This document shows, piece by piece, positions 1,027-64,000 of a DNA stretch of 64,000 nucleotides. The notes beneath the pieces were generated by a model. The model worked only from the letters and a program-made list of their open reading frames with translations. It was not told where the DNA came from and searched no databases. Position 1 is the stretch's first letter; each line of letters opens with the position of its first letter. The DNA is taken from positions 186,001 through 250,000 of the IMG/VR virus record IMGVR_UViG_3300042868_007959; one strand, given 5' to 3'. The position numbers and the translations under genes are program-made.

Positions 1027-1062
1027 ATTATAAAACTATTTATTAATTATTAAAAGTAAATA

Positions 1063-3231
1063 TTATACTATTTCTATTGGTTCAACAAGAACTTCTATTT
1101 TACCAAACATTTTATCTAATTCATTTTGATCGATAACTTTATTGGTATCTACATCATCATCAAAATCGTCTGGATCTACAATTATACCACCTTCTGATCC
1201 TGCATCAACTTCTCTTTTCTTATTCCAATACTCTGAACAAGTTTGATCTAATTTATTTTCTAAATCTACTAATTTCCCAACAGATAAAGGTTTCCCATCT
1301 ACACTTGTTTTAGGTAAAAATCCCGCTATTAATTCGTCAACTGTTGGGACTTTGGGGAATGCACCACCGACCAATGGGGTATTTCTTAAAAAATCACTTA
1401 TGTCTTTGAACCATTCATTATCTCTTTCTTTACCTTTAAATTGTTCATTAGTTTCTTTTTCAAAATTTTGTAAAGATTCCTTTAAGTATTTTATACGCTC
1501 TCTTAATTTTGTAGATTTACCTTCTTTATCATTACAAAAATCTTCAATTTCTTTTTGATTCCATGAGGCAATATTTACTATATTATTATATTCTACACTA
1601 AATTCTTCTAATGCCGTCATATATTCATCTTTTTTATTAAAAAAAGCGTCTACTTTTTGGTTACATTCACTTATACAACTATTAGTATTAGCATTACCAT
1701 AACCGAATTTACTTTCACATTTTGATCTACATCTAGCGTAACCAATTTTCCTTAAATTTTCTAAATCTCTTTTAACAGATTTCAGTGGTTCTACTACTAA
1801 AAATCCTAAAGGATGATACTTCCATAGTTTACTATTACCATAATCGGCACCTGCAGTCATTATTAAGGATTCTGAATCAGGTAAACTACCTCTTTGGGTT
1901 GATACATAAATTTCATTTAAACTAATTAAAGCGACTTGTTCTACCACAATTATTCTAAGGACATCTTCTATATTTTTCATTCTTTTACCTGACCAACCTT
2001 CAGCATTTTTAGGCATGTTATAGTCAACAAAACTAAATCTTTTATTACTATATAACTTTTTTCCTGAAGTAAGAAAACGAACCACTTTTAAACTTTCAGA
2101 TATTGTTGGGAATATATATCTAAAAGTTTGTCCTAGTTTATCGTTAATTTTACCCGCAAAATTATTTTTTGGGGTATTGTCTACAATTGTTTTTTGTATT
2201 ATTGGGTTTTCACCACTAGTTGGATCTACGTCAAAGTCTTTAATAGGACTCGATGGTGGAGTAACATCTATAGGTTTTAAATTTTTCTGACTAATTAAAT
2301 TTAAATTATCATCAAATATCAATTCAAACCCCTCAACAATATTAACACTTCTATAACCACCATTTGGTAATTTTACTATTAATACTTTCCCACCGTCAAT
2401 TTCTTTTGCTAATCCTTCAGGTGTAATACTTCTCCCTTTTCCGTCACCTAAATTTTTAAGTGCTCGTTCAATAGCATCTATTATTTCACCTTTTATTACA
2501 TCAGGATTACCATTCGCATTTATTTCATCTGTTGTTGCTTTAGTTGGTCCAGCAGAAGAACCACCATCAACACCATCATAATAGTCATTTACTTCCTTAC
2601 TAGCACTATTAGGATCATATGTATCATCTTTTTTAATATTATCACCTTCTATTTTATAAGTTTCTATTTTTTCTTTACCACCCACAGTCTCTACTTTATG
2701 AACAACATTTTCACCTGTATTAGATTTAGTAACTATGGTAGTTTTAGATTTAGTTTTTGGTGGTGTATATTTACCTTTACTTTCTTTCCATAAATCAAAT
2801 ACCATACCTCTTAAATCACCTTCAGCGGGTAAATCATTTATCACCTGTAAGATTAATTTATCATCCGCAGTTTTTAAGAATCCACTATCTGACCATTTTT
2901 TAAATGATAAAATTGCGTCATTTGCGTAATCCCAGTTAATGCCCATAGATCTCCATAAAGATTTATAGTCGTTTAAATGTCTAGCTAAATCATCAAAAGT
3001 ATTAATTTCGGCATTTAAAAAATTAGTTGCAAGTTTTGGGTCAACATTTTTAATAGCTTTTGCAACTGAAGAACTAGCCGTCTCTAATGCATCAGATAAT
3101 CTTCTACCAATACCTTGTTCAGTTAATAGTTTATTTTCTTTTAAATTACCATATAATCTTTCCTCAGTAAATAAAGATTTAATTCTCTTCATTTCTTCAT
3201 TTAAATTATTATATTTTTTTTTCATATTCAT
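1063..3231 (-). CDS. Leader-bearing putative internal virion (ejected) protein, 722 aa; shares ~130-aa domain with 7636..10632
   Basis: LNEEMKRIKSLFTEERLYGNL leader, LLTE|QGIGRRL junction, Cys cluster CRSKC...CISEC. Confidence 0.6.
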   Translation of the reverse strand: MNMKKKYNNLNEEMKRIKSLFTEERLYGNLKENKLLTEQGIGRRLSDALETASSSVAKAIKNVDPKLATNFLNAEINTFDDLARHLNDYKSLWRSMGINWDYANDAILSFKKWSDSGFLKTADDKLILQVINDLPAEGDLRGMVFDLWKESKGKYTPPKTKSKTTIVTKSNTGENVVHKVETVGGKEKIETYKIEGDNIKKDDTYDPNSASKEVNDYYDGVDGGSSAGPTKATTDEINANGNPDVIKGEIIDAIERALKNLGDGKGRSITPEGLAKEIDGGKVLIVKLPNGGYRSVNIVEGFELIFDDNLNLISQKNLKPIDVTPPSSPIKDFDVDPTSGENPIIQKTIVDNTPKNNFAGKINDKLGQTFRYIFPTISESLKVVRFLTSGKKLYSNKRFSFVDYNMPKNAEGWSGKRMKNIEDVLRIIVVEQVALISLNEIYVSTQRGSLPDSESLIMTAGADYGNSKLWKYHPLGFLVVEPLKSVKRDLENLRKIGYARCRSKCESKFGYGNANTNSCISECNQKVDAFFNKKDEYMTALEEFSVEYNNIVNIASWNQKEIEDFCNDKEGKSTKLRERIKYLKESLQNFEKETNEQFKGKERDNEWFKDISDFLRNTPLVGGAFPKVPTVDELIAGFLPKTSVDGKPLSVGKLVDLENKLDQTCSEYWNKKREVDAGSEGGIIVDPDDFDDDVDTNKVIDQNELDKMFGKIEVLVEPIEIV
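2739..3120 (-). repeat. Dispersed coding repeat copy 1 (EQGIGRRL...KSK domain), paralogous to 10185..10563
   Basis: Long identical nucleotide runs, e.g. gcagtttttaagaatccactatctgaccatttttt in both copies. Confidence 0.9.
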
Positions 3232-3241
3232 ATATTTTATG

Positions 3242-3925
3242 TTAATGTTGTAATAATTTTAATATTTCTGTTTTATCCATACCCTTATTGAGAACATTAC
3301 CATTAACAATATTACTACTATTTAGATAATAAGTAAGGACATCACCAAATTTTAATACACCTGAAGGTATATTCATAGAACTAGATTCACTACTACTAAT
3401 TGTCACATCTACTAAACTACCTGAACCATCTTTCTTTTTAAATGGTGAATTTTCCCAATCAGAGCTACCTCCTTTAAAAACACCTACATATTTAAAGGTA
3501 GAGGTTCCGCCTTTTATTTTGATGTCGGTACCATCACATTCGTATTTTGATCGGTACATTAATTTTTTACTACCATTTTCTGGATTTAATAAAAAAGTTA
3601 ATATTAATTGATTATCGGAATAAAATGTTAAATGAAAAGTAGGTATACCACTTGTTTTATAATTACTTTTAGCCAATACGAAACAATCTTCTACAGTATT
3701 ACCAGCAGAAGCAACAGATATTCTACCACTTACATCTGATAAAGCTTGTTTTGTACATTTTATATTGTCGTTACTATCACATATATTTTCAGATTCAGTA
3801 GGATTAAAAACTTTATATCCATTAGATTCTAAATCTTCCTCACATTGTTCTAAATCTCCACCACATTGTTCTTTAAGCAACATTAAAGTTTTAATTCTAT
3901 TTAATTGCTCCGTTAAGTTCTTCAT
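3242..3925 (-). CDS. Leader-bearing putative internal virion protein, Cys-rich
   Basis: MKNLTEQLNRIKTLMLLKE|QCGG; six Cys. Confidence 0.6.
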   Translation of the reverse strand: MKNLTEQLNRIKTLMLLKEQCGGDLEQCEEDLESNGYKVFNPTESENICDSNDNIKCTKQALSDVSGRISVASAGNTVEDCFVLAKSNYKTSGIPTFHLTFYSDNQLILTFLLNPENGSKKLMYRSKYECDGTDIKIKGGTSTFKYVGVFKGGSSDWENSPFKKKDGSGSLVDVTISSSESSSMNIPSGVLKFGDVLTYYLNSSNIVNGNVLNKGMDKTEILKLLQH

Positions 3926-4085
3926 TAAATATTTTTTTTAATTCTTCTTTATATAATTGTATTTCTTCTTGTAAGATTTCAATACTCTCTTTATCATTTA
4001 TATTATAAATATTAAATAAATTATTAATTTCATCTAATCTATTTTTTATAATATCTATTCTTTCTTGTATTTCTAAAACTATCAT
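3897..4085 (-). CDS. Small acidic coiled-coil hypothetical protein
   Basis: ATGA overlap with the upstream stop; fills the gap in the operon. Confidence 0.5.
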   Translation of the reverse strand: MIVLEIQERIDIIKNRLDEINNLFNIYNINDKESIEILQEEIQLYKEELKKIFNEELNGAIK

Positions 4086-5920
4086 TTTTGATTTTTTAAA
4101 TAATCCTCTTGTTGTTGATTTAATAAATCTATTGCATCCGATCCTTTTTTACCGTCATCTACACCAGACACTGCATCCATCTCTTCTTTATTATCAACGT
4201 ATCTAACATTATCTTTTCTATTCTTTTCATCGGTAGGTGCCATTTCTATATTAGATACTTCTTTACCACTTATACTTTTATTCATTAAATCAGAAGTTTG
4301 TGTAGATAACCAATCCTTAAATTTTTTAGTTTGAAATTTAGGGTTATTTAGTAACCACTCTCTTGATTTTTTTATATCGTCTTCAGTTGGTATTTCTTCA
4401 CTTTTTGTCCAAGGTCTCCATCCTTTAGTATAAGCGTTATTAAGTAATGTATTATCTGTAATTGATCCATCAGAAAGAAATATTTCTTTAGTAGACTTCC
4501 AGTCATAACCATCATTTTTAATATTAGTTTGCACAGTTGGTTTAAGAGAATGTTGTACTAAATTAATTTTATCCGATAACCATTTAGCTACTTCAGGTTC
4601 ACTTAAAACCTCTGATAATATAACATACATACCTAACTCTTGTAAAGCTTCTTTTCCTGCAATAGTTTTCATATACGCATTTAATGATGTAACTACATCA
4701 CCATTATTTTGTAAAACTAAATTTTTAAAGTTTTTATTTTTTGAAACTGTAAGTAAGTTAGCCCTACCTACCCTACTTTCTATTTTTGTTAATGCGTCAC
4801 TGTAAATTTTTGCAGATTTAGGATCAATTTTAGCAAAATTATTAATTATATCGTGTCCGACTAATATCTCAGATTGATTAAGTCCGTATTTATCTGCAGT
4901 TTCTTTATAAATTTTTACTAATTTTTGATTTTTTACATCGGTTGATACATTTTTTAAAAGAGGTAATTCATTATCAACCCTTTTAATTACATCATCCGCA
5001 TACTTATAAACTTTAATATTTGCACTACCTTTAGTCAATATTCTATTAGTTTGACTAACACCTCCTCCTAAAAATCCACCAAAAAGTGTTAACCCACCAG
5101 CGAGTATAGCGGCATCTCTTTCTTCTTTTGTTTTCGCATTAAAAGCCTCGACACCATATGTAGAAGCATTCGCAAAATCTATTCCCGCACTTAACGCTAA
5201 CCCAACTCCTGGTATTGCTAGTACTGCAATAGAAGCGATATCCAAAGCACAATGATAGTCACTAAAACAATCCCCAATATACTCCCATACACTGGTAGAT
5301 TTTTCATATTGATTTAAAGTTCCCTTATTGTATGAAATATCATAACTAGCAATTTTTTGTATTCTGTTTTTTATTTGACTGTAATTATCTGACCCAAAAT
5401 ACTTAGTAAAAAAGTTCCACCAACCTTCAGGAAAATAAGACGACCTCCAAGCATTTTTATCATACTTAAAAGTTGCTTCTAATTCTTTTTGAATTTTTCC
5501 CCACTGAAAATAAATAGTATCATTATTTGCGATATCAGATGCTCTCTGTTTACCTATCATTTTATCCGATATTTGATCAGCCAAATCACTGAAATCTTTT
5601 GCAACATATAGTCCACCTCCCGCTGCCACATTACATGTACCTAATTCCGCTTTTGAAATACAAACATCATACATACCTTTGGTACCTGTAATTACTTTTT
5701 CAGCGATATAAACATTATTTAATTCCTTTATAGCATTTAATGCTGATTGAGCAAAAACATGATTGGCAGACAATGAACCACCTATTAAATAATTGGGCCA
5801 ACCATTACTTCTTAAAAAATTTTTAGTAGATTCAACCTCATTACTAATAGATGATTTAGTTTCTTCTTTTAAAAATATTCTTTTATATTGATTTTCCGTT
5901 ATGAAAATTTTTTTTTTCAT
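4082..5920 (-). CDS. Leader-bearing protein with pre-toxin-TG-like hydrophobic hairpin
   Basis: ITENQYKRIFLKE leader; ALDIASIAVLAIPGVGLALSAGIDFANASTYGVEA...AAILAGGLTLFGGFLGGG. Confidence 0.55.
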   Translation of the reverse strand: MKKKIFITENQYKRIFLKEETKSSISNEVESTKNFLRSNGWPNYLIGGSLSANHVFAQSALNAIKELNNVYIAEKVITGTKGMYDVCISKAELGTCNVAAGGGLYVAKDFSDLADQISDKMIGKQRASDIANNDTIYFQWGKIQKELEATFKYDKNAWRSSYFPEGWWNFFTKYFGSDNYSQIKNRIQKIASYDISYNKGTLNQYEKSTSVWEYIGDCFSDYHCALDIASIAVLAIPGVGLALSAGIDFANASTYGVEAFNAKTKEERDAAILAGGLTLFGGFLGGGVSQTNRILTKGSANIKVYKYADDVIKRVDNELPLLKNVSTDVKNQKLVKIYKETADKYGLNQSEILVGHDIINNFAKIDPKSAKIYSDALTKIESRVGRANLLTVSKNKNFKNLVLQNNGDVVTSLNAYMKTIAGKEALQELGMYVILSEVLSEPEVAKWLSDKINLVQHSLKPTVQTNIKNDGYDWKSTKEIFLSDGSITDNTLLNNAYTKGWRPWTKSEEIPTEDDIKKSREWLLNNPKFQTKKFKDWLSTQTSDLMNKSISGKEVSNIEMAPTDEKNRKDNVRYVDNKEEMDAVSGVDDGKKGSDAIDLLNQQQEDYLKNQK

Positions 5921-5931
5921 ATTACTATTAG

Positions 5932-6972
5932 TTATTTAACTTTTGGTTCGACTCTAAATGTACAATCATTAAGATTATTATCTGCATCTATAATTGTAAT
6001 ATTATGTTCCGATGGTTTTAAATTTAATGTAGTATATACCGCATTAAGTGAATCTGATCTAAAACTAATTTTTATTTTCCCGTTTTGAGGATTTTCTTTT
6101 TTCTGCATAAAAGTATAACCTCTTTCACCATTAAATTTATATTGGTTTCCTGTAATTTTCTTTATTTTACCAATTACCCTACCTCTAGTATCTTTGACAT
6201 CATATTTTTGACCTTCTACTCCTTTTGAAACTGAGGCTTCCCCACTTCTATAATCAGATATATATTTATTCTCCTCAAATGAAGATATCATAGTCATAAG
6301 TTTTTCATTACCCTCAAATTTATTATAGAAATTAGCCATACATCTCTCTACAGTTTTATATGCATCTGGATCAAACCCAAATTCTTCTAAATCTCCAGGA
6401 CCAGCCCCTTTAGACCAAGCTTTATACATTGCTTTAAGATGTTCTTTACAACTATCTATATTATTGCTAATATCTTTTCTATCTACTTTTACGTCAGTTT
6501 TAATATCTTTTTTGATACCTTTACCTTCTTTTTTGGACATAAACTGTAATTCCGCATCTTTTGTAATATAAATTTCTACGGGTGTACCACTATCATCATT
6601 AACTCTTTTTTTAACATAATACATATCTTTACCTGGTTTTGGTCTAGATACTGTCCCTAACTTCAATTTAATGTCAACAAATGACATTCTTTTCACATAA
6701 GTCTTTCCACCAATAACTTTTTGTTCATAGAAATCTAATGAATCACTTTCACTCCCTTCTATTTCTTTTTTCTTTTCATCTGTTAATTCAACAAATCCTT
6801 CAGGAATGTTCGGATTAGGTTTACCATCATCCTTTTTACCATCATCCTTCTTATCATCATCAACTGGTTTATCATCCTCACCTTCTACTAAATTCCCAAA
6901 CAATCTCTCTTCAGTAAATAAAGATTTCATTCTCAGTATTTGTTCATTTAAATTTAAAATATTTTTTCCCAT
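5932..6972 (-). CDS. Leader-bearing putative internal virion protein
   Basis: LNEQILRMKSLFTEERLFGNLVE leader nearly identical to that of 1063..3231, then a D/K-rich linker; late motif at 7005-7012. Confidence 0.6.
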   Translation of the reverse strand: MGKNILNLNEQILRMKSLFTEERLFGNLVEGEDDKPVDDDKKDDGKKDDGKPNPNIPEGFVELTDEKKKEIEGSESDSLDFYEQKVIGGKTYVKRMSFVDIKLKLGTVSRPKPGKDMYYVKKRVNDDSGTPVEIYITKDAELQFMSKKEGKGIKKDIKTDVKVDRKDISNNIDSCKEHLKAMYKAWSKGAGPGDLEEFGFDPDAYKTVERCMANFYNKFEGNEKLMTMISSFEENKYISDYRSGEASVSKGVEGQKYDVKDTRGRVIGKIKKITGNQYKFNGERGYTFMQKKENPQNGKIKISFRSDSLNAVYTTLNLKPSEHNITIIDADNNLNDCTFRVEPKVK

Positions 6973-7027
6973 AATTTTTCTATTATATACAATTATTCTA
7001 ATAAATAAATATTAGATAAAAATAAAA

Positions 7028-7049
7028 AATCCCACCTAAAGATGGGATT
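7028..7049 (-). terminator. Likely intrinsic terminator after tail tube gene
   Basis: aatccca-cctaaaga-tgggatt stem-loop with T-run on the minus strand. Confidence 0.55.
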
Positions 7050-7075
7050 AATTAAAATATATGTCATTCTAAAAA

Positions 7076-7564
7076 TTAGAATACACTTATTGCTCTATCA
7101 AAACGAAGTGTTGCAGTAATATCTGCCAAATCAGAAGATGAATAATCTAATGACCCAAAGTCCACATCGTTTAATTGTGTCCCTTGTAAAATCCATTTTT
7201 GAACCACTACACCTGTTGGGTCTAACATCTCTAACTCTATGTCTTTCTTATAACCTGCAGCATAACCTTGTCTACCTGTTACAGATTCAGAGTGTAAACG
7301 AACCCACTCCATTAACGCCTGAGTCGCAGAAGGACCAATAGGGTCTCTAAAAGTTACAGAGATTGATTCCCAGTTAAATCTACCAATTACATATGTAGAA
7401 GTATTTAAAAAAGGTATCTCCACCTCTTGACTCGTATATTTTGGTCGGCTAGTTGTAGATACCCACCATTCTTGAATTCCCAATTCATCTGGAAATCTCA
7501 AAATAAACCTATTCTTTCTTAGCGGTTCGTAAGGAACAGGCATTCTCATTAATAAATCAGCCAT
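7076..7564 (-). CDS. gp19: Tail tube protein (T4 gp19-like)
   Basis: EPLRKNRF, GRFNWESISVTFRD, YKKDIELEMLDPTG, W.LQG, L.FD; near sheath gene. Confidence 0.9.
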   Translation of the reverse strand: MADLLMRMPVPYEPLRKNRFILRFPDELGIQEWWVSTTSRPKYTSQEVEIPFLNTSTYVIGRFNWESISVTFRDPIGPSATQALMEWVRLHSESVTGRQGYAAGYKKDIELEMLDPTGVVVQKWILQGTQLNDVDFGSLDYSSSDLADITATLRFDRAISVF

Positions 7565-7610
7565 CTTAATTTTTTTTTAATTTTTTTTTATTAGTTGTAT
7601 TATTTATTAT

Positions 7611-7618
7611 ATAAATAT
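7611..7618 (-). promoter_or_regulatory. Putative late promoter ATATTTAT upstream of tail tube
   Basis: Same 8-mer on the sense strand upstream of many structural or leader-bearing genes. Confidence 0.65.
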
Positions 7619-7635
7619 TGAATTTTTAGAAAAAT

Positions 7636-10632
7636 TTATTTTTCAATAATAATTCTTTTCTTTTTAGGGTTATTTGGGTCAGATGTATCATACACATTAA
7701 AATGTATCTCTGGATATTTCACACTCAATTCTTTCCTTATTAAATTTTCAATAATCTCTATATTACTTAAATCGTCATCACTATAACCAACACTAATACC
7801 CTCAAAATCAGGGTTATCCTTTATTTCTTCAATTTGTTCTATAACTCTTTCCACAAAACTCCTAAACGCAATTTCTTTTCCTTTTTCGGGATTTGTACTT
7901 GATATATCTAAACCAAAACTATTTAAAAATTCTTTTGAAGATACTGGATGATAATCTTGTAATTTAAGATAATCATTTATTGATGTGTCTTTAAGGTTAC
8001 CCATCATTTTTTCTTTTTCACTATAAGAAAAGTTTTTATCTATTAATACTTTAATACCATCTATTAGTGACTGTGGTGAATTTGATCTGGCAGTAATGAT
8101 AGAGAAGTCATCTCCATTAATTAAAGCCTCTTTAAAATCATTAAAACTAGGTCCGTAACTTCTACTATCTATTGCATATTTAACATCTCTAATAAAAGAA
8201 TCGTACTCTCTAAAATCTTTAAACGCTTCTAATATGTCATTATTAATATATCTAAACTCATCACCTAATTTATGTCTAATAGATCTAAATTGTTCGGTAG
8301 AAACTGAAACAGGTACCCAATGTAATCCACCAACTTTATATTCTAAATGAATTCTTGTTGGCATTTTTAAAATATTATCATCCCAATCGAATGAATATGT
8401 TTTTTTGATTGATTCAGTTAAATAACTTTTTTTATATATAATAGATTCATTTTTGGGAGTTTCATTCTCATCATCGGTTAAACCACTAACAATAAATGGT
8501 AATAACGCTGGAAATCCAGCCTCAATCAACTTATAAGCTTGTCTATATAAATCCTTTTCAAGTTTTTTTGCTTGTTCAGGATAAATTTTTTTCCATTTAC
8601 GTTCTAATTTACCTAGTACATCAAAAAATTCTCTTGGTATATTATTAACCCAAGCATCAACATCTTTTAACTCATTTCCTAATTTAACTTGATCAGTAAC
8701 ATTTTTATTTAAAAATTTATCTATAAATGTTTTAAAATAATCTTTTATTTTTTCTACACCTGTTAGATTATTAATATTTGGTTTTTCTGCACTCAACATA
8801 GTTTTATATTTTTGTAAGTCAATATCTACTAATTTCTGAGATTTATTTGTCCCCCTTAAATAATCAACTAGAAAAGTTGCAAAACCTTTATTTTTTTCTA
8901 AAGTACCTAACTCCAACAAAGTTTTAATATTTGCAGTGAATTCCGCCTCAATTTCCTTAACATGACTCCAATAACTTAAATCACTTGCAGATTCTTTTAC
9001 AATCCTCTCAATTTCGGGTGTAGTTATATTATTCTCTATATATTTTAAAAATTGTCTATCATTTAAATTTTCTGTTTTGTTTTTTATTTTTTTATAATTA
9101 TCCCCAAACTCAGACCAACTATCAATTGATAATTTTAGAGATCTAATTTTAACATCGTTACCAAATAAATTTATATCAAACTTAGTAAGTGGGATTTTCA
9201 CTGTATCCTTACTTATATATTTTTCAGGTATAATTTTATTTTCTAAAGCCCATTTTTTGAATTCATGTACCCAACTGTAATCCTTACTAGTATCTATATT
9301 TTTTTCCACCCCAAATTGACTAACCGCCTTTTCAGCAGCGTCATTATCCTCTCTTTGCCATTGGAAAAAATCTGCGTTATCTACTTCCTCATTTTTTATG
9401 GGTGTCTTTTCTCTTTTACTTTTTAAATAATCCCAAGCCTCTTTCCCATCTACGAATTCGCTTGATTTATAAGTATTAAAACTATGATTACTTTTTTTTT
9501 GTATGACGTGTGTTAATTCATGATAAATCGTATGAAATATAGTATTTTTTAATTCTTCTAAATCTTTAGGATTTCTAGCTTTTTTTATTTCTTTTGTATT
9601 GATTATAACCCATTGACCCCAATTACCATTTATTTCATCTGCATACATTCTTACCCCTAAAGGAACATCGTATCTATAAACATACTTTTCTTTTAATTTA
9701 GGATCTTTTAATATTTTTTCATTTTTAACCCAGTCCTTTATATACGGTTTTTTATCCCAATCAGCATTTTCAAAAGTCTTATCATATTCCTCTTTATATA
9801 GATCAAATAATTTATCATCATCAATTTTTGCATTATTAAACTGCTCAGGACCTTTATCATTTAAAGAAAATTTTACGTTATCACCATTTATCTGTAATGT
9901 AACATAAATAGGTTCACCAGTATTTGTATCATACCCCCATTGATCCTCAAAACCATATTTTTTAAACGACGCATCTATAATATCCCACTCATCTTTTGGA
10001 ATATCAGATAATTTTAATCCAGATACTTGTTGTGGTATTTCTTTAGAATCTGTATCTAAATCTATTTTAGTATCGTCTATATTTGATAAATTACCTTCAT
10101 TATCTATAGTATAATTTTTTATCTCACCACCTTCAGTTTTTTGTACTATATTCTTACCACTTTTTTTATCTTTAACTACAATAGTTTGTGATTTAGGTTT
10201 CGTTGGTGAGTACGTACCTTTACTTTTTTTCCATAAATCAAAAACTATCCCCCTTAAATCTCCTTCAGTTGGTAAATCATTTATCACTTGTAAAATTAAA
10301 TTATCATCTGCAGTTTTTAAGAATCCACTATCTGACCATTTTTTGAAATTAATAACTGCCTTATTTGTGTAATCCCAGTCAATTCCTGTTGATTTCCATA
10401 AAGATTTATAGTCATTTAAATGTTTACCTAGATCATCAAAACTTTTTATTTCAGTATTTAAAAAATTAGTTGCAAGTTTTGGATCAACATTCTTAATAGC
10501 CTTAGCGACTGCGGAAGAACTATCTTCTAAAGCATCCACTAATCTTCTACCAATTCCTTGTTCAGAAATTAAATTATTATTTAAAAATTTTTTTAATTTT
10601 TTAATTTCCTTTTCTGAAAATAATTTACTCAT
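7636..10632 (-). CDS. Multidomain putative polyprotein: leader + shared N-domain + zincin metallopeptidase + C-terminal HAD-like phosphatase
   Basis: LISE|QGIGRRL; HELTH (9508-9522) with downstream EIEA; FDWDDN, ITAR, K, SDDD HAD motifs after an internal YLTE. Confidence 0.65.
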   Translation of the reverse strand: MSKLFSEKEIKKLKKFLNNNLISEQGIGRRLVDALEDSSSAVAKAIKNVDPKLATNFLNTEIKSFDDLGKHLNDYKSLWKSTGIDWDYTNKAVINFKKWSDSGFLKTADDNLILQVINDLPTEGDLRGIVFDLWKKSKGTYSPTKPKSQTIVVKDKKSGKNIVQKTEGGEIKNYTIDNEGNLSNIDDTKIDLDTDSKEIPQQVSGLKLSDIPKDEWDIIDASFKKYGFEDQWGYDTNTGEPIYVTLQINGDNVKFSLNDKGPEQFNNAKIDDDKLFDLYKEEYDKTFENADWDKKPYIKDWVKNEKILKDPKLKEKYVYRYDVPLGVRMYADEINGNWGQWVIINTKEIKKARNPKDLEELKNTIFHTIYHELTHVIQKKSNHSFNTYKSSEFVDGKEAWDYLKSKREKTPIKNEEVDNADFFQWQREDNDAAEKAVSQFGVEKNIDTSKDYSWVHEFKKWALENKIIPEKYISKDTVKIPLTKFDINLFGNDVKIRSLKLSIDSWSEFGDNYKKIKNKTENLNDRQFLKYIENNITTPEIERIVKESASDLSYWSHVKEIEAEFTANIKTLLELGTLEKNKGFATFLVDYLRGTNKSQKLVDIDLQKYKTMLSAEKPNINNLTGVEKIKDYFKTFIDKFLNKNVTDQVKLGNELKDVDAWVNNIPREFFDVLGKLERKWKKIYPEQAKKLEKDLYRQAYKLIEAGFPALLPFIVSGLTDDENETPKNESIIYKKSYLTESIKKTYSFDWDDNILKMPTRIHLEYKVGGLHWVPVSVSTEQFRSIRHKLGDEFRYINNDILEAFKDFREYDSFIRDVKYAIDSRSYGPSFNDFKEALINGDDFSIITARSNSPQSLIDGIKVLIDKNFSYSEKEKMMGNLKDTSINDYLKLQDYHPVSSKEFLNSFGLDISSTNPEKGKEIAFRSFVERVIEQIEEIKDNPDFEGISVGYSDDDLSNIEIIENLIRKELSVKYPEIHFNVYDTSDPNNPKKKRIIIEK
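10185..10563 (-). repeat. Dispersed coding repeat copy 2, paralogous to 2739..3120
   Basis: Direct nucleotide and protein comparison. Confidence 0.9.
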
Positions 10633-10656
10633 ACTAATAAATATTGTGGTTAATTA

Positions 10657-10682: not shown

Positions 10683-10709
10683 ATTAATGAAAAATAAATA
10701 CACATAAAT

Positions 10710-10740: not shown

Positions 10741-10755
10741 TTTAAAATAACTGAT

Positions 10756-11121: not shown

Positions 11122-11712
11122 TTATCTTCCTGTTCTTCCGTATTGTCTTGATCTTCCTTTGAAAGCCAATGCTAATCCTGCTGCAACCATAGCCAACGAT
11201 ATTGGTCCACCATAATTTCCTGCTCCAGCCATTTCTACGAAATCATGAATTTTTGTAGTCAACTCAAATTCTGACCAACCAGTTATATTTCCAAGTGCAG
11301 TGATTGCTCCCGATAAAGCTAAACCAGCTCCACCACCCATCATTGCTTTCTCACCGAATGCAGCATTTCTACCACCCATTCTTCTTGGTGTGTCTTCATT
11401 TTCTCTAATTCTTCTTTCAGACATACGACCAGAATTTGGTTCATTTACCTTTCTTTCTAACATTCTAGATTCCTCTGGTGTTAATTCGGGTAAAATTTCT
11501 TCTTTAAAGAAGTCTGAAATTAAATCAACAACTTCACTTTTAGATAATTCACCACCTTCTAAATCATTAAGATCATCATTAGAATATTTCGATAAATTTA
11601 AATTACCGTATGTTGGGTGAACATCATCCATTCCACCCATATCCTCTTTAATAACTCTTTTGACTATTCTTCTTAAATCAGTCTCAGTTAATCTTACTAT
11701 TCTTTTTGCCAT
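11122..11712 (-). CDS. Leader-bearing protein with C-terminal Gly/Ala-rich hydrophobic hairpin
   Basis: LTETDLRRIVKRVIKE leader; GGGAGLALSGAITALG and GGPISLAMVAAGLALAF. Confidence 0.6.
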   Translation of the reverse strand: MAKRIVRLTETDLRRIVKRVIKEDMGGMDDVHPTYGNLNLSKYSNDDLNDLEGGELSKSEVVDLISDFFKEEILPELTPEESRMLERKVNEPNSGRMSERRIRENEDTPRRMGGRNAAFGEKAMMGGGAGLALSGAITALGNITGWSEFELTTKIHDFVEMAGAGNYGGPISLAMVAAGLALAFKGRSRQYGRTGR

Positions 11713-11736: not shown

Positions 11737-12021
11737 TTAGGATTGTACTCCTGAATTTTGTTTGTCTTTAAGACAATTTAGTGCTGCAATAGCTTTCATA
11801 CCTTCACCCATAGGATCCTTAAGTATTATTCCCCCAATTTCCTTAACACATTTAGTATAATCTCCTGTTGTACAAGACATAGGTGCTTTAATACCTGCAT
11901 CCTCACAACATTTCACTAAATCTTCTTTTGGATCTGATTCTTCCTTCAAAAGTTTGTTTACGATTCTCTTCATATCTGATTCAGACAAAGTTATCGTTTT
12001 ACCGTTTTTTCTAATTTTCAT
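11737..12021 (-). CDS. Small leader-bearing Cys-rich protein
   Basis: LSESDMKRIVNKLLKE leader; five Cys in the remaining ~65 aa. Confidence 0.6.
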   Translation of the reverse strand: MKIRKNGKTITLSESDMKRIVNKLLKEESDPKEDLVKCCEDAGIKAPMSCTTGDYTKCVKEIGGIILKDPMGEGMKAIAALNCLKDKQNSGVQS

Positions 12022-39859: not shown

Positions 39860-41653
39860 ATGTCAAAAACTAATTTAACTGAAGAACTAAGAAGAATGAA
39901 AAACTTAATGGTGTATAATAATGGACAATATAATAATCCATTAAGGGAGGCAGTTGATACAACTACCCTACCATCGTTTAGTGAAAAGGTGGATTTCGGA
40001 GGAGGATGGTATACATTAGATGGAGAATATAAAGGGACAACTTGGAACATTCCTGATGATTTGAAGGATGAGTTGTCGTCAGTTAAAGAATTTTTATTAA
40101 AAAATCCATCTGGGTATATTGTTGACGTAAGAATAGATTCGGGTGAATCAAAAATACCTAATGTGGATGCGACAGGTAAAAAAGGAACTTATCCTAGTAA
40201 CAAAGTACCACCTAAATATCTATCTAATGAACGAATGAAAACAATTAAAGATTATGTTACAAGCGTTTTTGATACTTGGGTTGAAGAAGGTGTTATAAAA
40301 GATAAATTAAATATTGTTACAACAGAACCAGTTATTGGGGGAACTAAATGGGTTGGTCAGGAATTTTGTCCAGAAGATAAAAGAGCTGGTGATCCTGAGG
40401 GATATAAATGTACAACCGCATTTAATGATGGATTGGCTAAGGGTAAATATGCCGATTTTAAGAAAGCGTATATTGAGGAGCAGTATGTTGAGGTAGTAAT
40501 TAAAGTTAATAAAATTGAGGGTGAAGAAGAGACGCCAAAAGAGGTAACAGGTAAAGATCCATTAGAATGTGCAACAAATTTAAAAATACGAATTTGGGTT
40601 GCGTCACACGACTGTCAAAATGCCGAATTTTTTGTTTATGCAAATAATACCCCATTAAAAAATACAGTGGGGGGAATGACTGCAAATTTAAATAATAGTA
40701 GTGTTGATAGAGGGGTACCTAGAACAAACTCACAACCAACATTTCAGTCGGAATTCTTAAATCCAGGATATGGATATTTACCAAATGGAGATGGTACGTA
40801 TGGTTATAAATACGGTTCAATAAATAAAGAAGGAAATTTAAGGGGGGGTAGATCCGATACATTTATTTTAAGCGAACAACAAGTTAAAGATATAATCAAT
40901 GAAAATCAAAATAAAAATAGTAAATCAATAATCTCTTTATGGATGATAGCCACTACAAGTAATGCACATAAGGATATCCCTCAAGTGACAATAACTTTGG
41001 GTGACGAAGTTATTTACGACAAAGCCCCTAAAATTACTAAAGGAAAACTATTATCTTTTGATGTTTGTACAAAGAAAGTAACTGAAAGTAGTGATACTCA
41101 AGAACCTGATTTAGGGGCACAAATTAATAAAATAGTTAGGGAAAAAAGAGAATTACAGGAAAAAAATATTACATCTGGTAAAGTCACAAAGAAAAAACAA
41201 ATGAAATTAGATCAAAAAGGTGTAGTCTTAGAAAGATCCGAAATTCTAGTAGATAAAATTACATCTTTATTATCTTTTCTATCTAAAAATATAACATCTA
41301 CAACAGAGGTAAGTGATGACGTTAAAAAAAGACTATCAGATGATTTTATTGAGATGCAGAAAGAATTAAAAGGAGATATAGAATCGGGAATACCATCATT
41401 AGAGGCAACTTGGGATGGTGAAAAATTAACATTTGTAGATAAAACTATTAGAAATAGTGATTTATATGGTGATATAAGAATGGATATTACTAAATTTTAT
41501 AAAGGATTTATCTTAGCGTATTATAGATTTAAAAAATTCAACCCAAAAGGGATACCGACTGAATCGGATTGGGCGGGTAATGTAGATGGTAAAAAACTTT
41601 TAGAAAGAATGAAAGTACCTAAAATATCACAAGAATTTGGATTAACGGTATAA
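39860..41653 (+). CDS. Leader-bearing protein with OmpA-C-like domain
   Basis: NLTEELRRMKNLM leader; FLLKNP...I.SGES...LSNERMKTIKDYV...EQYVEV; late motif 39835-39842. Confidence 0.6.
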   Translation: MSKTNLTEELRRMKNLMVYNNGQYNNPLREAVDTTTLPSFSEKVDFGGGWYTLDGEYKGTTWNIPDDLKDELSSVKEFLLKNPSGYIVDVRIDSGESKIPNVDATGKKGTYPSNKVPPKYLSNERMKTIKDYVTSVFDTWVEEGVIKDKLNIVTTEPVIGGTKWVGQEFCPEDKRAGDPEGYKCTTAFNDGLAKGKYADFKKAYIEEQYVEVVIKVNKIEGEEETPKEVTGKDPLECATNLKIRIWVASHDCQNAEFFVYANNTPLKNTVGGMTANLNNSSVDRGVPRTNSQPTFQSEFLNPGYGYLPNGDGTYGYKYGSINKEGNLRGGRSDTFILSEQQVKDIINENQNKNSKSIISLWMIATTSNAHKDIPQVTITLGDEVIYDKAPKITKGKLLSFDVCTKKVTESSDTQEPDLGAQINKIVREKRELQEKNITSGKVTKKKQMKLDQKGVVLERSEILVDKITSLLSFLSKNITSTTEVSDDVKKRLSDDFIEMQKELKGDIESGIPSLEATWDGEKLTFVDKTIRNSDLYGDIRMDITKFYKGFILAYYRFKKFNPKGIPTESDWAGNVDGKKLLERMKVPKISQEFGLTV

Positions 41654-41667
41654 TAAATTAATAAATT

Positions 41668-43725
41668 ATGAAAAAAAACAATTTAACAGAAGAATTAAAT
41701 AGGATAAAGAATCTAATGGTTTACAATAATGGAGACTATAGAAATCCTATATATGAATTTGAGTTATTAAATGAAGCCCCTACTGATGAAGTAAAAGAAG
41801 TTTCTTTACAAGCCAATTTTAAATCAGGTAGATGGAAAGATACATCGTTACCAAAAACAGAAATTTTGGCTGAACTTAAAGAAGCAATAGATTGGCTAAA
41901 ACAAAAATCTAAAGAAATAAAAGATAGTGGTGGTATAATAGGTGGACAAGCAAAAATTTTAACAGTTCAAATAGAAGCTGGAGAATCACAAGTAACCAAT
42001 TACGATGCTGAAGTAGATCCTAAAGTCAAATTAGAAGAAAAAGTTTTATCTGAAAGAAGGGCTAAGACTATACAAACTTTCTTAACTAATTACTTTAAAA
42101 AATTACAAAAAGATAAGACTATTGATGCAATACCTGTATTTGAGGCACCTGTAGTTAAAATTGGTCCAACACCTTGGAATCCTAAAGGAGGTGATGAAGC
42201 GACAGATAAAAAATTTACTAAAGAACAATATATAAAAGTTAATTTTAAATTAACTCCACCTTCAGCTTGTTTGGAGGGATTAGTTATTGAGGTTATGTAT
42301 GTAAAAGAACCGAATCCTTCATTTCCATGTAGAGGAGGACACCAATGTGACGACGCATTATTTGATGTTTATTTGAATGAGACTAAATTAGATGGGGTAG
42401 CTAACTTAAATAATGCCGAAGATGGTGGAAGTAGAAGTTCTAAATTTGTAGTTTCACCACAACAAGCGTTATCGATATTAGGTAATAAACCAGGAAACAT
42501 TATGATATCTTTTGTATGTAAAAACAAAGATAAAAGATGTCACTCAAGTACACCTGAGATTAGATTAAGTAAAGGTGGTACAGTTGTATATCACGAATGT
42601 ACACCCTCAATCAGTGAAACTAATGATTATTCTAAAATAGATGTGATGGAATTAGATGCGTGTGGTAATTTAATTAAAAAGGGTCAAGAAAAGAAAACTG
42701 CACAAAAAGATGAATCTTTAATGAAACCACCTGCAGGTATCAAAAAAGGGTGGGTGGTTTACGACATTGCAACTAAATTACCTGTTTTTAAAGATACTTC
42801 GGCTTCTACAGATTTACAAGAAAATATTTACAAAAAATACTTACCATTATACGGTTATAATTTTGGTGGTTACGAACCTGAGATTTATAAAGGTAATTGT
42901 AATGAAGCAAAAATTTACGGTGGATGGTGTTTGTGGTCAGGTATAAAAATTAATTATGTAAATGATCAATTTTGTGGTGGAGCTGAATCGGGTTCGTCAT
43001 ATAAATTAGGTTCAGAAAGTACGGTTAATACTAATTTAGGTAAAAGTATAACTAATAGTATGAGGAATTATATGTTAGATAATTGTGATAGTTCTACTAT
43101 GGGAGTAGAATTGGGTGACATAATAACAGTTAAAAAAGATGATATACCAAAACAATTTAATTTTAAAAGATTATATTCTCCATTAGGAGTTTATTCTAAC
43201 CCAAAAATTGTCGGTAATGCATCTACACCATTTAAATTAGTTCCAAATGAAAAACCTAATGGTATAAATTTCACACCTAAATTATTTACAGATTTTGTTA
43301 ATAATATATATGGCACAGAACAAACCACAATAAAAACTCAAAACCTAATCAATTTAATCACAACCACTACTGTTTCTGATTTAAGTGATTCGACAAATGC
43401 AATATCATTCTTCATCACCACTACAGATGAAACTTTTGGATCTACAACATTTCCTAATTCAACAAAAATCGATTCGTATGTTAGTAAATATAATACATTT
43501 AAAAATGAAAAATTAACGGGAAGTGTTGTAGTTGGTGGATTTAAAGAAATACAAAATACATTTCTTAGTTTAAGTGTTATCAGAAAATATGAAAAGGGTA
43601 TTTTTAAAAACAATACTTTACGTGTTATGTTATATGGAAATCAACCATATTCATCAGTTGCGCAAAAATTGATATCTTTAGGATTGATTAAAGAAAAAAG
43701 TGGTAAATTAGTTTTATCTAAATAA
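41668..43725 (+). CDS. Leader-bearing paralog with OmpA-C-like domain
   Basis: NLTEELNRIKNLM leader; I.AGES...LSERRAKTIQTFL...EQYIKV; second domain shared with 39860..41653. Confidence 0.6.
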   Translation: MKKNNLTEELNRIKNLMVYNNGDYRNPIYEFELLNEAPTDEVKEVSLQANFKSGRWKDTSLPKTEILAELKEAIDWLKQKSKEIKDSGGIIGGQAKILTVQIEAGESQVTNYDAEVDPKVKLEEKVLSERRAKTIQTFLTNYFKKLQKDKTIDAIPVFEAPVVKIGPTPWNPKGGDEATDKKFTKEQYIKVNFKLTPPSACLEGLVIEVMYVKEPNPSFPCRGGHQCDDALFDVYLNETKLDGVANLNNAEDGGSRSSKFVVSPQQALSILGNKPGNIMISFVCKNKDKRCHSSTPEIRLSKGGTVVYHECTPSISETNDYSKIDVMELDACGNLIKKGQEKKTAQKDESLMKPPAGIKKGWVVYDIATKLPVFKDTSASTDLQENIYKKYLPLYGYNFGGYEPEIYKGNCNEAKIYGGWCLWSGIKINYVNDQFCGGAESGSSYKLGSESTVNTNLGKSITNSMRNYMLDNCDSSTMGVELGDIITVKKDDIPKQFNFKRLYSPLGVYSNPKIVGNASTPFKLVPNEKPNGINFTPKLFTDFVNNIYGTEQTTIKTQNLINLITTTTVSDLSDSTNAISFFITTTDETFGSTTFPNSTKIDSYVSKYNTFKNEKLTGSVVVGGFKEIQNTFLSLSVIRKYEKGIFKNNTLRVMLYGNQPYSSVAQKLISLGLIKEKSGKLVLSK

Positions 43726-62883: not shown

Positions 62884-64000
62884 TTATCTTAATTCGTTAA
62901 GATCAAAAGTTTGAACTCCATCAACAGTTACAGTTCCGTAGAATCTGTTGTTCACCATTTTCTTAGCGTATCTCGTCATGATACCTTTAGTTGGTGCAAA
63001 GTTAAACGGATTTTGTAATGTAGGTGTCAATTGTAGAGGTACATACGGTGCGTAAATGTATCCTGTATCTAACAATGATTTACCTTTGTGTCCAATAATG
63101 ATTGAGTTAGCTGGTGCATAAGGGTCTCTAAATACAGTATATCTACCACCTAATGAACCGATTTTCTCAATACCCATATTGTATTGGTCTTGCTCTGGAG
63201 AAGCGTTTGATACGTGGAAGTATTCTAAATCGTCAAAAATTGCTGATACCTCAGAAGATACAACGATAAAGTTAGCTCCACCTCTCAAAGTAGACTTATG
63301 AATTTGAGCAGATACTTGATTTACTTTTGTAATCAATGTCTGATTCCACTCTTTTTGAGTGTATGCGTTGAAACCACCACCGTTGTTAGCTCTCTTCCAA
63401 CCGTTGTAATCCCATCTCAATTGCCATGCTGCTCCTTTTCTTAAATCTCTTAAGATCTCTCTATCAATCTCAGCAGCTACCTGCTCAGACAATAAAGCCG
63501 TAAGTTCAGCTTCAGCATCGATGTTATGGAATGCACTAACGTCTTGTGCTAATTCAGGTGACCAAGTAGCTCTTAGTTTTCTTTCTGTAACCGATACAAC
63601 TACTTCATCCAATTCAAAAGATACTTCACCCATTTCTGTAGCGAATTCTAATGTTGCATATTGTGCCCAAGATACAGATAAATTTCCCCACTGTTCTGCC
63701 GTTGTAGCTGAAGTAGCACCTACATAACCATCGAAGTTTGAAGATGTACAATTGATACAAGCTGGGTGAGTTAAATCTAATTCGATTAATAAACATCCGT
63801 CAGGTTGACAAATATTAGTATAATCAACAATACCTCTACCATATTTTTGAGATACTAATCTGAATGGTACTACACCACCTGCAGCGATAATAGTTTTACC
63901 ATCTTTATCTAAGATAGCGTCATCACTAGTTACTGTTAAAGAAGCTAAGAAAGACTCAGTATCCATTTCGTTTCCGTCTGGTCCTGTCAATCTACCTGCA
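62884..64000 (-). CDS. gp23: Major capsid protein (T4 gp23-like), 5' part outside window
   Basis: RKLRATWSPELAQD..AFHNIDAEAEL...EIDREI, RGGANFIV.S, YAPYVPL, GIMTRYA. Confidence 0.97.
   Translation of the reverse strand, partial: AGRLTGPDGNEMDTESFLASLTVTSDDAILDKDGKTIIAAGGVVPFRLVSQKYGRGIVDYTNICQPDGCLLIELDLTHPACINCTSSNFDGYVGATSATTAEQWGNLSVSWAQYATLEFATEMGEVSFELDEVVVSVTERKLRATWSPELAQDVSAFHNIDAEAELTALLSEQVAAEIDREILRDLRKGAAWQLRWDYNGWKRANNGGGFNAYTQKEWNQTLITKVNQVSAQIHKSTLRGGANFIVVSSEVSAIFDDLEYFHVSNASPEQDQYNMGIEKIGSLGGRYTVFRDPYAPANSIIIGHKGKSLLDTGYIYAPYVPLQLTPTLQNPFNFAPTKGIMTRYAKKMVNNRFYGTVTVDGVQTFDLNELR

What the first reader, a model, noticed from the sequence alone, without database searches (positions are those of the whole stretch)
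2739..10632. Leader and cargo are recombined exactly at the predicted cleavage Glu
Seen: the 722-aa and 998-aa proteins have different leaders but become highly similar exactly at E|QGIGRRL (nt 3120 and 10563). They stay similar for ~130 aa, then diverge into unrelated C-terminal regions. The 722-aa and 346-aa proteins share only the leader (LNE..R.KSLFTEERL[YF]GNL.E) and nothing after it. Inference: a three-tier architecture (leader / conserved delivery domain / variable payload) like that of polymorphic toxins. This independently marks the Glu as a functional boundary.
Basis: partly seen in the sequence, partly recalled or inferred. Interest (0 to 1): 0.8.

Follow-up and report, generated by a model that had tools for sequence, protein, structure and literature searches.

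The report
Swappable leader, adaptor and payload modules
A large uncultured T4-like phage of Bacteroidota builds a family of probable injected virion proteins from three exchangeable parts (a short leader ending in a conserved Glu, a phage-lineage-matched adaptor domain, and a variable enzyme payload), and natural recombinants break within a few codons of that Glu.

Summary
The 722-aa and 998-aa proteins share 67% identity over about 180 aa, starting at N-x-L-[LI]-[TS]-E|QGIGRRL. The 722-aa and 346-aa proteins share only the 30-aa leader.

The window belongs to a ~282-kb low-GC myovirus. Its head module, just beyond the window end, encodes a T4 gp23-type capsid protein, a gp20-type portal and a gp21-type (Peptidase_S77) prohead protease. 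Nine convincing window genes carry the same kind of N-terminal leader, each ending in [LIV]-x-E.

In relatives the post-Glu domain is joined to six different C-terminal classes and at least four leader types.

The clearest case is one payload gene found in two phages. Leader and payload are 96-100% identical in DNA, but the middle domain is only 33% identical in protein. It instead matches the co-resident core gene, and the crossover lies in the Glu-Gln-Arg codons.

Best reading: capsid-targeting propeptides like the T4 CTS, a lineage-matched docking domain, and pre-packaged enzymes. Cleavage and packaging are inferred, not shown.

Separately, Bacteroidota chromosomes hold at least nine lipoprotein genes (eight placed on a tree) built from this phage domain. 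Each is closest to a different phage lineage.

The parts
1063..3231 (-). 722-aa core protein: leader, adaptor domain and a long, largely helical C-terminal region with four invariant Cys
   Evidence: About 40 orthologues of 700-730 aa. Conserved position just upstream of the baseplate hub gene in L001, L002 and L012-L019.
3118..3231 (-). Leader of the 722-aa protein (aa 1-38). Type A core LNEE.KRIKSLFTEERLYGNLKE (first [LIV]xE site at E32) followed by spacer NKLLTE (second site at E38).
   Evidence: E12, R16, K18, S19, L20, F21, G28, N29, E38 and Q39 are invariant in 26 homologues. The model shows a helix at aa 10-20 and pLDDT below 50 for aa 21-41.
2566..3117 (-). Post-Glu adaptor ('delivery') domain of the 722-aa protein, aa 39-222
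   Evidence: AlphaFold2 on 36 sequences: pLDDT 87.5, pTM 0.84. No PDB or BFVD fold match. No Pfam or PHROG hit.
7636..10632 (-). 998-aa accessory protein: leader B, adaptor domain, HExxH-bearing middle region and HAD-like C-terminal domain
   Evidence: Present in some relatives (L001, L012, L013) and absent in others (L002, L003, L014-L019).
10561..10632 (-). Leader B of the 998-aa protein (aa 1-24, ends NLISE)
10015..10560 (-). Adaptor domain copy in the 998-aa protein (aa 25-206)
8410..10014 (-). Middle region of the 998-aa protein (aa 207-741), with HELTH at aa 371-375 (nt 9508-9522). It ends at an internal leader-like site, YLTE740 followed by S.
   Evidence: This internal site aligns with the leader site LKE15|T of the stand-alone 273-aa gene on L002. 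Function not identified.
7636..8409 (-). HAD-superfamily-like C-terminal payload of the 998-aa protein (aa 742-998, plus the stop codon)
   Evidence: 70% identical to the stand-alone L002 4056-4877 gene, which has its own leader. Atlas neighbours are DUF2608 / Acid_phosphat_B / HAD_SAK_1.
5932..6972 (-). 346-aa protein: leader A (aa 1-30, nt 6883-6972, ends GNLVE) on an unrelated cargo
4082..5920 (-). 612-aa protein with a short leader similar to the T4 CTS (aa 1-19, nt 5864-5920, ITENQYKRIFLKE)
   Evidence: The L002 orthologue (797 aa) has about 190 extra residues inserted directly after the leader.
3242..3925 (-). 227-aa protein with a leader (aa 1-19, nt 3869-3925, ends LLKE)
11122..11712 (-). 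196-aa protein with a leader (aa 1-23, nt 11644-11712, ends VIKE)
   Evidence: On L001 the same leader sits on a different cargo (158 aa).
11737..12021 (-). 94-aa protein with a leader (aa 1-27, nt 11941-12021, ends LLKE)
39860..43725 (+). Two paralogous leader-bearing genes (597 aa at 39860-41653, 685 aa at 41668-43725) that lie outside the tail module
62884..64000 (-). 3' part of the T4 gp23-type major capsid gene. The rest of the head module lies just beyond the window end: scaffold-like gene, Peptidase_S77 protease, gp20-type portal and terminase.
   Evidence: PF07068, E 3e-61. on L007, which is the same genome.

Best explanation
These genes most likely encode virion proteins that are packed into the prohead and injected with the DNA. 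They are built from three modules.

(1) Leader. A 15-38 aa N-terminal leader contains an amphipathic helix of the form h-[STN]-E-x(1-2)-h-x-[RK]-h-[KV]-x-h, followed by a flexible stretch ending in h-[LIV]-x-E. It would work like the T4 capsid targeting sequence: it docks the protein to the scaffolding core, and the phage's gp21-type (S77) prohead protease then removes it by cutting after the Glu. This step is inferred.

(2) Adaptor domain. The mature protein then starts with a ~185-aa domain of unmatched fold. This domain is shared by a conserved ~720-aa core protein and by accessory proteins. Accessory copies are repeatedly overwritten by the co-resident core copy through gene conversion, which is shown here. 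The domain therefore probably binds the core protein itself or a partner specific to that phage lineage, so that accessory payloads travel with the core protein. This role is inferred.

(3) Payload. The C-terminal payload varies: an HExxH region plus a HAD-like domain, a NUDIX fold, a beta-propeller, and others. These would be enzymes delivered ready-made at the start of infection. This is also inferred.

All leaders must keep the same cleavage motif. The few conserved codons around the Glu (GAA CAA ...) are therefore both the functional boundary and the patch of microhomology at which modules are exchanged.
For: Module boundaries and exchange (shown):
- BLAST and DNA boundaries inside the window.
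- Six C-terminal classes and four leader types on one domain.
- N-domains of the 998-like proteins are not one clade (AU p 2e-6).
- The two paralogues on L001 group together (SH-aLRT 99) and are about 94% identical in DNA, but only from ACT GAA CAA GG to the end of the helical part.
- The L021 438-aa gene and the P0064 gene are 96-100% identical in DNA in leader and payload (payload 99.1% aa) but only 33% aa identical in the domain. That domain is 75% aa identical to the co-resident 530-aa gene, and the crossover lies in GAA CAR AGA.
- Further junctions fall at [LI]xE sites: the HAD domain occurs both alone and fused, and the 612/797-aa pair differs by an insertion right after the leader.

Support for processing:
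- The genome encodes Peptidase_S77 (E 4e-23), Gp23 (2e-71) and Portal_T4 (4e-78).
- P4 and P3 are aliphatic and P1 is Glu in 49 of 49 distinct N-termini.
- The short leaders have the pattern Y-x-x-h-h-x-E, as in the T4 CTS MKTYQEFIAE (bioRxiv 10.1101/2021.01.19.427310). In that CTS residues 4 and 7 direct targeting and residues 8 and 10 direct processing (PMC9026906).
- The leader motif is found at the N-terminus of 10 of 64 window genes (9 convincing), against 2 internal matches in 19,351 residues.
- The residues around the Glu are modelled as disordered.
- Leader genes also occur next to the terminase gene (L007 8-859) and at 39860-43725, not only among tail genes.
Against: - There is no proteomic or biochemical evidence for packaging or cleavage.
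- [LIV]xE is common by chance in this proteome: 14 sites in the 722-aa protein against 12 expected. Only its conserved position carries information.
- Most leader genes lie between the tail sheath, tail tube and baseplate hub genes, which would also fit a tail-associated role.
- No sequence or fold homology to T4 internal proteins or to any characterised protein was found.
- The leader regular expression was written after the leaders had been seen.
Confidence: 0.58

Rival explanations
1. The leader is a loading signal for the tail lumen, as in extracellular contractile injection systems (PVC/Afp). It would direct cargo into the tail tube rather than the head, and it would not be cleaved.
For: Seven of the nine convincing leader genes in the window lie between the sheath (12074-14923), tube (7076-7564) and baseplate hub (250-1026) genes. 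The leader has the length of known eCIS N-terminal packaging signals (own knowledge). The model shows a short helix followed by disorder.
Against: A strictly conserved h-[LIV]-x-E at the end of every leader type would have no role if nothing is cut. An internal leader-like site sits at a domain junction in the 998-aa protein. The phage has a T4-type head with an S77 protease and a separate candidate tape-measure gene on L001 and L002 (coiled-coil-like N-terminus read by eye). Leader genes also occur beside the terminase gene and elsewhere in the genome.
Confidence: 0.14
2. This is ordinary paralogy and domain shuffling. The N-terminal helix is a structural or oligomerisation element of non-virion or uncleaved proteins, and the Glu merely marks a domain linker.
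For: Domain boundaries are common recombination points. [LIV]xE is frequent by chance. No function could be assigned to the domain.
Against: This does not explain why unrelated proteins share near-identical leaders under purifying selection. It does not explain why four unrelated leader types converge on the same four residues before the Glu. It also does not explain why the motif is restricted to N-termini.
Confidence: 0.15
3. It is a true polymorphic toxin system. The C-terminal domains are toxins aimed at competing bacteria or the host, and immunity genes accompany them.
For: The architecture is a conserved N-terminal module with variable C-termini. Phage MuF polymorphic toxins provide a precedent (PMC5576092).
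Against: The payloads that could be recognised are a NUDIX fold, a HAD-like domain and a propeller, not known toxin folds. The downstream genes are conserved structural genes, not variable small immunity genes. No MuF domain was detected. No integrase was seen in the 64-kb window or in the roughly 40 kb of flanking sequence inspected for this genome and its relatives.
Confidence: 0.05

Closest known systems
T4 capsid targeting sequence (CTS) on internal proteins IPI/IPII/IPIII and Alt, removed by the gp21 prohead protease
   Same: A short N-terminal propeptide is shared by unrelated cargo proteins and ends in h-[IL]-x-E. The same protease family (S77) and the same gp23/gp20 head genes are present. 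Cargo sets differ between related phages (PMC9026906, PMC3012670).
   Different: The leaders here are longer (15-38 aa, some with two sites in tandem) and come in several sequence types. A conserved adaptor domain lies between the leader and the payload and is kept matched to the resident phage by gene conversion. Many of the cargoes are large (94-998 aa) rather than the small basic proteins of T4. No sequence homology to the T4 IPs was detected.
Propeptides of giant phages phiKZ, 201phi2-1 and SPN3US
   Same: Many head or ejection proteins are cut after Glu by a gp21-related protease. Propeptides hold multiple sites. Diverged paralogues keep identical N-termini, for example SPN3US gp53 and gp54 (PMC5694885).
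   Different: The motif in those phages is (S/A/G)-x-E and many of their propeptides exceed 100 aa. Here the motif is [LIV]-x-E with short leaders, and the head genes are of the T4 type.
MuF polymorphic toxins of temperate phages
   Same: A conserved N-terminal domain associated with the phage head is fused to variable C-terminal domains (PMC5576092).
   Different: There is no MuF domain here. There is no toxin/immunity pairing. A cleavable leader is present, and no integrase was found in the sequence inspected.
Polyvalent proteins of phages and conjugative elements (Iyer et al. 2017)
   Same: These are multidomain proteins thought to enter the host with the DNA and act early in the conflict with the host (PMC5512222). 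The 998-aa protein has at least three modules.
   Different: No curated LPD domain was detected. There is only a weak atlas lead to LPD23 (score 0.86). The modular leader/adaptor logic is not part of that concept.
Superinfection-exclusion lipoproteins such as T5 Llp and Cor of lambdoid phages (own knowledge). This entry concerns the side finding only.
   Same: They are small envelope lipoproteins encoded by mobile elements that could block incoming phage.
   Different: Those proteins mask the receptor and are not copies of a phage virion protein. Here the lipoproteins are truncated copies of the phage's own adaptor domain.

Membership tests
T4-type CTS-directed, gp21-processed head proteins | The phage encodes a gp21-family (Peptidase_S77) prohead protease together with a gp23-type capsid protein and a gp20-type portal | tested here: met
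   L007 (same genome as the window): PF03420 E 3.9e-23, PF07068 E 1.8e-71, PF07230 E 4e-78. The capsid gene's 3' end lies in the window at 62884-64000.
T4-type CTS-directed, gp21-processed head proteins | A short N-terminal propeptide ending in aliphatic-x-Glu | tested here: met
   49 of 49 distinct N-termini of the domain family have aliphatic P4 and P3 and Glu at P1. All nine convincing window leaders end in [LIV]-x-E.
T4-type CTS-directed, gp21-processed head proteins | The same leader occurs on unrelated cargo proteins | tested here: met
   722 vs 346 aa. L001 158 aa vs window 196 aa, and other pairs.
T4-type CTS-directed, gp21-processed head proteins | Sequence homology of the leader or cargo to the T4 CTS or internal proteins | tested here: inconclusive
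   There is only a pattern resemblance: Y-x-x-h-h-x-E in the ITENQY-type leaders versus MKTYQEFIAE. There were no PHROG or Pfam hits.
T4-type CTS-directed, gp21-processed head proteins | The leader is physically removed and the mature protein is present in capsids | not testable with these tools
   This needs virion proteomics or biochemistry.
Polymorphic toxins (including the MuF family) | A conserved N-terminal trafficking module with variable C-terminal domains | tested here: met
   Six C-terminal classes on one domain.
Polymorphic toxins (including the MuF family) | The C-terminal domain is a toxin and is followed by a cognate immunity gene | tested here: not met
   The payloads are NUDIX, HAD-like, propeller or unknown. 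The downstream genes are the tail tube, the baseplate hub or other conserved genes.
Polymorphic toxins (including the MuF family) | A MuF (PF04233) head-morphogenesis domain | tested here: not met
   No Pfam family was detected in the 722-aa protein, and only two sub-threshold hits to unrelated families in the 998-aa protein.
eCIS-type cargo with an N-terminal packaging signal | A headless contractile particle that loads cargo into the tube | tested here: not met
   A complete T4-type head module is present.
Polyvalent proteins | Presence of the curated LPD or associated domains in a multidomain virion protein | tested here: inconclusive
   No Pfam hit. The atlas lead to LPD23 scores only 0.86.

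The most novel reading that the evidence does not exclude
Bacteroidota hosts, through small chromosomal islands or mobile elements, have repeatedly captured the C-terminal two thirds of this phage adaptor domain and fused it to a lipoprotein signal peptide. The resulting envelope-anchored copy would act as a dominant-negative decoy. It would intercept the ejected core protein or its partner in the periplasm and block infection by the matching phage lineage. This would be a bacterial counterpart of immunity derived from endogenous viral elements. It would also imply that the adaptor domain works in the host envelope after ejection.
Probability: 0.3. Interest if true: 0.85.

Novelty: new variant of a known kind. 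Interest (0 to 1): 0.68.

Why it matters
If the reading is right, the T4 'capsid targeting sequence' principle is not a peculiarity of T-even coliphages. It would be a general, evolvable system for packing chosen proteins into capsids, here in distant, uncultured jumbo phages of Bacteroidota.

The system has an extra layer, an adaptor domain that must match the resident phage. The natural recombinants show directly which pieces are interchangeable and where the joints are. That makes a testable blueprint for protein delivery by phage in a major environmental and gut-related phylum.

The payloads (NUDIX, HAD-like, HExxH) are candidates for pre-packaged counter-defence enzymes.

The lipoprotein copies in host genomes point to a possible defence principle that is not in current defence catalogues. 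They also give an independent handle on where the domain acts.

Tried and rejected
Searches that found nothing:
- PHROGs and Pfam on the 722, 998, 346, 612, 227, 196 and 94-aa proteins gave no informative family.
- GenBank phages: megablast of nt 1-12000, tblastn of the 722-aa protein and tblastn of the leader peptide all gave no match.
- PDB sequence searches with the payloads of P0037, P0064 and the 998-aa protein gave nothing.
- Foldseek with the high-confidence domain model against PDB and BFVD gave nothing below E 0.04, with TM at most 0.30.
- The full-length 722-aa model was too weak to use outside aa 41-220 (pLDDT 58).
- The atlas search with the 998-aa middle region was uninformative.
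- Two scans of GTDB species genomes for the lipoprotein homologues found nothing, so the hosts are named only to phylum from the neighbouring genes.
- PADLOC on the lipoproteins and their neighbours found no known defence family.
- The word-based homologue search with the lipoprotein profile added only one informative new member, P0081, plus a 74-aa fragment, P0082.

Ideas considered and dropped:
- The leader as a Sec or T9SS signal. It is hydrophilic and amphipathic, not hydrophobic or C-terminal.
- The conserved leader DNA as an RNA or regulatory element. The changes are mostly synonymous, so selection acts on the peptide.
Full report
**What the window is**

The window has 28% G+C. It encodes a contractile-tail phage. 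The tail sheath gene is at 12074-14923, a gp19-like tail tube gene at 7076-7564 and a baseplate-hub-like gene at 250-1026, all on the minus strand. Replication genes and a glycosyltransferase cluster are also present.

The last gene in the window (62884-64000, minus strand) is the 3' part of a T4 gp23-type major capsid gene. A contig of 281,944 bp carries the same sequence. On it, the genes just beyond the window end are an acidic scaffold-like gene, a Peptidase_S77 (T4 gp21 family) prohead protease, two small genes, a gp20-type portal and the large terminase.

No GenBank phage is close. The nearest capsid and sheath proteins are 30-43% identical. They belong to an uncultured 484-kb phage, Flavobacterium phage immuto, Microcystis phage Mel-JY01 and Rhodothermus phage RM378.

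**The observation**

The 722-aa and 998-aa proteins align at 67% identity over aa 33-214 and 19-199 (E 4e-71), and nowhere else. In DNA, identity of about 85% begins at the Thr/Ser-Glu-Gln-Gly codons and fades after about 370 nt.

The 722-aa and 346-aa proteins share only the first 30 residues (E 7e-08). There the DNA differences are mostly synonymous.

Two corrections are needed. The shared block begins about five residues before the Glu. And the shared module is about 185 aa rather than 130.

**The leaders are a genome-wide signal class**

A motif of the form h-[STN]-E-x(1-2)-h-x-[RK]-h-[KV] lies within the first 20 residues of 10 of 64 window genes. Nine of these are convincing. The same motif occurs only twice in 19,351 internal residues. 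The pattern was written after the leaders had been seen.

Every leader is followed by [LIV]-x-E. The same holds in orthologues on related contigs, even where the flanking residues differ.

Leader genes are concentrated between the sheath, tube and hub genes. They also occur at 39860-43725 and next to the terminase gene (L007 8-859).

The shortest leaders, of the ITENQY type, have the spacing Y-x-x-h-h-x-E. This is the spacing of the T4 capsid targeting sequence MKTYQEFIAE (bioRxiv 10.1101/2021.01.19.427310). In that sequence residues 4 and 7 direct targeting and residues 8 and 10 direct processing (PMC9026906).

**The post-Glu domain is a module with many partners**

An exhaustive profile-free search found 37 representative proteins. 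In the 28 representatives (of 37) that carry a phage leader the domain starts 17-45 residues from the N-terminus.

BLAST clustering of the C-terminal regions gives six classes:
- 722-like (39 sequences);
- a ~590-aa class (13 sequences);
- 998-like (8 sequences);
- a NUDIX-fold payload, P0037 (atlas feature score 0.97, TM 0.92-0.98);
- a DUF5122 propeller, P0056;
- an unknown payload, P0064.

At least four unrelated leader types precede the domain. Even so, in 49 distinct N-termini P4 and P3 are always aliphatic, P1 is Glu and P1' is Gln or Ala. E38 and Q39 are invariant in the 722 family.

AlphaFold2 on a 36-sequence alignment gives a confident model (pLDDT 87.5, pTM 0.84). It shows a helical bundle, then a four-stranded sheet, then a helix. 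No similar structure was found in PDB or BFVD. In the full-length model the leader forms a helix at aa 10-20, and residues 21-41, which include the Glu, are disordered.

**Recombination at the Glu is directly visible**

- On contig L001 the 1007-aa and 706-aa paralogues are about 94% identical in DNA. The identical tract runs from ACT GAA CAA GG to the end of the helical part, and the genes are unrelated outside it. In the domain tree these two group together (SH-aLRT 99).
- The N-domains of the 998-like proteins as a whole are not one clade (AU p 2e-6).
- The clearest case is a payload gene present in two phages (L021 4119-5435 and L024 521-1765). Leader and payload are 96-100% identical in DNA, and the payload is 99.1% identical in protein. 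The domain between them is only 33% identical. The L021 copy of the domain is instead 75% identical in protein, and about 90% in DNA, to the core gene on the same contig.
- A three-way DNA alignment places the crossover inside GAA CAR AGA, the Glu-Gln-Arg codons.
- Other junctions also fall at [LI]-x-E. The HAD-like C-terminal domain of the 998-aa protein exists as a stand-alone 273-aa gene with its own leader in phages that lack the 998-aa gene. Its leader site LKE|T aligns with an internal YLTE740|S site in the 998-aa protein.
- The 797-aa orthologue of the 612-aa protein has about 190 residues inserted directly after the leader.

**Interpretation**

Module exchange and its breakpoints are shown directly. 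Cleavage, packaging into the head, and a docking role for the middle domain are inferred.

I favour head packaging through leaders like the T4 CTS, with removal by the S77 protease. The reasons are:
- the protease family is present in the genome;
- all leader types converge on its expected site;
- long leaders carry two sites in tandem, as known propeptides do (PMC5694885);
- an internal leader-like site at a domain junction makes sense only if it is cut.

Accessory copies of the domain are repeatedly overwritten by the resident core copy. This indicates that the domain must match something specific to the phage lineage, most simply the core protein itself.

Three points count against the reading. 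[LIV]-x-E is frequent by chance (14 observed against 12 expected in the 722-aa protein). Most of these genes lie in the tail module. And there are no proteomic data. An uncleaved signal for loading the tail lumen, of the eCIS type, remains a real rival.

**Comparison with known systems**

The closest known system is the T4 CTS with its internal proteins, whose cargo differs between T-even phages (PMC9026906, PMC3012670). Giant-phage propeptides (PMC5694885), MuF polymorphic toxins (PMC5576092) and polyvalent proteins (PMC5512222) share single aspects.

The defining features of toxin systems were tested and not met. There is no MuF domain, no recognisable toxin fold and no immunity gene.

**Side finding**

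At least nine short proteins (105-179 aa) carry a lipoprotein-type signal peptide. One of them, P0042, lacks the lipobox Cys and looks like an ordinary signal peptide instead. Most hold only the C-terminal two thirds of the domain.

Five of these genes were looked up, on six contigs. Four contigs carry genes typical of Bacteroidota chromosomes, such as SusC-like receptors, T9SS sorting domains, BamH, ribosomal proteins and glmS (L005, L006, L010, L025). L009 carries only mobile-element-type genes and L004 is too short to tell. On three contigs (L005, L009, L025) the gene directly follows a small membrane-protein gene. L005 has a resolvase and an integrase nearby, and L009 a resolvase.

Each of the eight placed on the tree is closest to a different phage lineage, at 47-79% identity. 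Together they need eight separate placements on the domain tree. A single origin is rejected (AU p 7e-47). No known defence family matches them.

Repeated capture of a phage domain as an envelope lipoprotein suggests a decoy or exclusion function. It would also fit a role for the domain in the host envelope after ejection. This is a hypothesis only.

Noticed in passing
L005 10001-10402; L006 126-563; L009 6504-6893; L010 10001-10402; L025 10001-10417 (proteins P0080, P0065, P0077, P0045, P0081): Bacteroidota chromosomal contigs encode small lipoproteins that are truncated copies of the phage adaptor domain. Each is closest to a different phage lineage. On L005, L009 and L025 the gene follows a small multi-pass membrane protein gene; L005 has a resolvase and an integrase nearby and L009 a resolvase. 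They may be decoy or exclusion proteins.
   Followed up: partly
window 8413-8415 (E740 of the 998-aa protein); protein P0038; L002 4056-4877: The 998-aa protein has an internal leader-like site at the junction with its HAD-like domain. In one relative (P0038, 772 aa) the protein ends just after a leader-B-like segment at this point. In others the HAD-like domain is a separate gene with its own leader. The 998-aa protein may be a polyprotein.
   Followed up: partly
L001 1229-1969 (minus strand); window 10756-11097 (+): In one relative a rhomboid-family protease gene lies on the opposite strand among the leader genes. At the matching place the window has a small opposite-strand ORF with hydrophobic segments.
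   Followed up: no
window 31292-36436 (-): A 1714-aa protein has a Peptidase_G2 intramolecular-chaperone autoproteolytic domain and YadA-like repeats. It sits in the only G+C-rich stretch of the window (42% against 28%). It is probably a fibre or spike protein, possibly acquired from elsewhere.
   Followed up: no
window 52241-52621, 51484-52239, 45916-46494, 55722-56456, 44067-51330: A SET-domain protein, PhoH, dUTPase, a sigma-70 region-2-like protein and a cluster of glycosyltransferase-like genes (only 46501-48075 was confirmed by Pfam; the others were read by eye or not scanned).
   Followed up: no
protein P0036 (912 aa): This is a 998-like variant in which the first five leader residues are joined directly to the middle of the adaptor domain. 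It is either a natural deletion or an assembly artefact.
   Followed up: no
L011 (Flavobacterium phage vB_FspM_immuto_2-6A, NC_055915.1) 4705-5169, 6218-6976, 16385-16606: This cultured relative has leader-like N-termini (for example MKKQILSEQFRRMQKLAGIITE and MKKSQLRQIIKEAL) and an annotated prohead serine protease. It could serve as an experimental model.
   Followed up: partly
window 1063-2565 (C-terminal region of the 722-aa protein): Four Cys residues (C501, C523, C566, C665) are invariant across 26 homologues that are as little as 24% identical to the window protein overall. They could form disulfides or bind a metal.
   Followed up: no
window 39860-43725 (+): Two adjacent paralogues (597 and 685 aa, 25% identical overall) keep a nearly identical 27-aa N-terminus that contains NLMVYNNG.Y.NP. 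This is a further leader subtype.
   Followed up: partly
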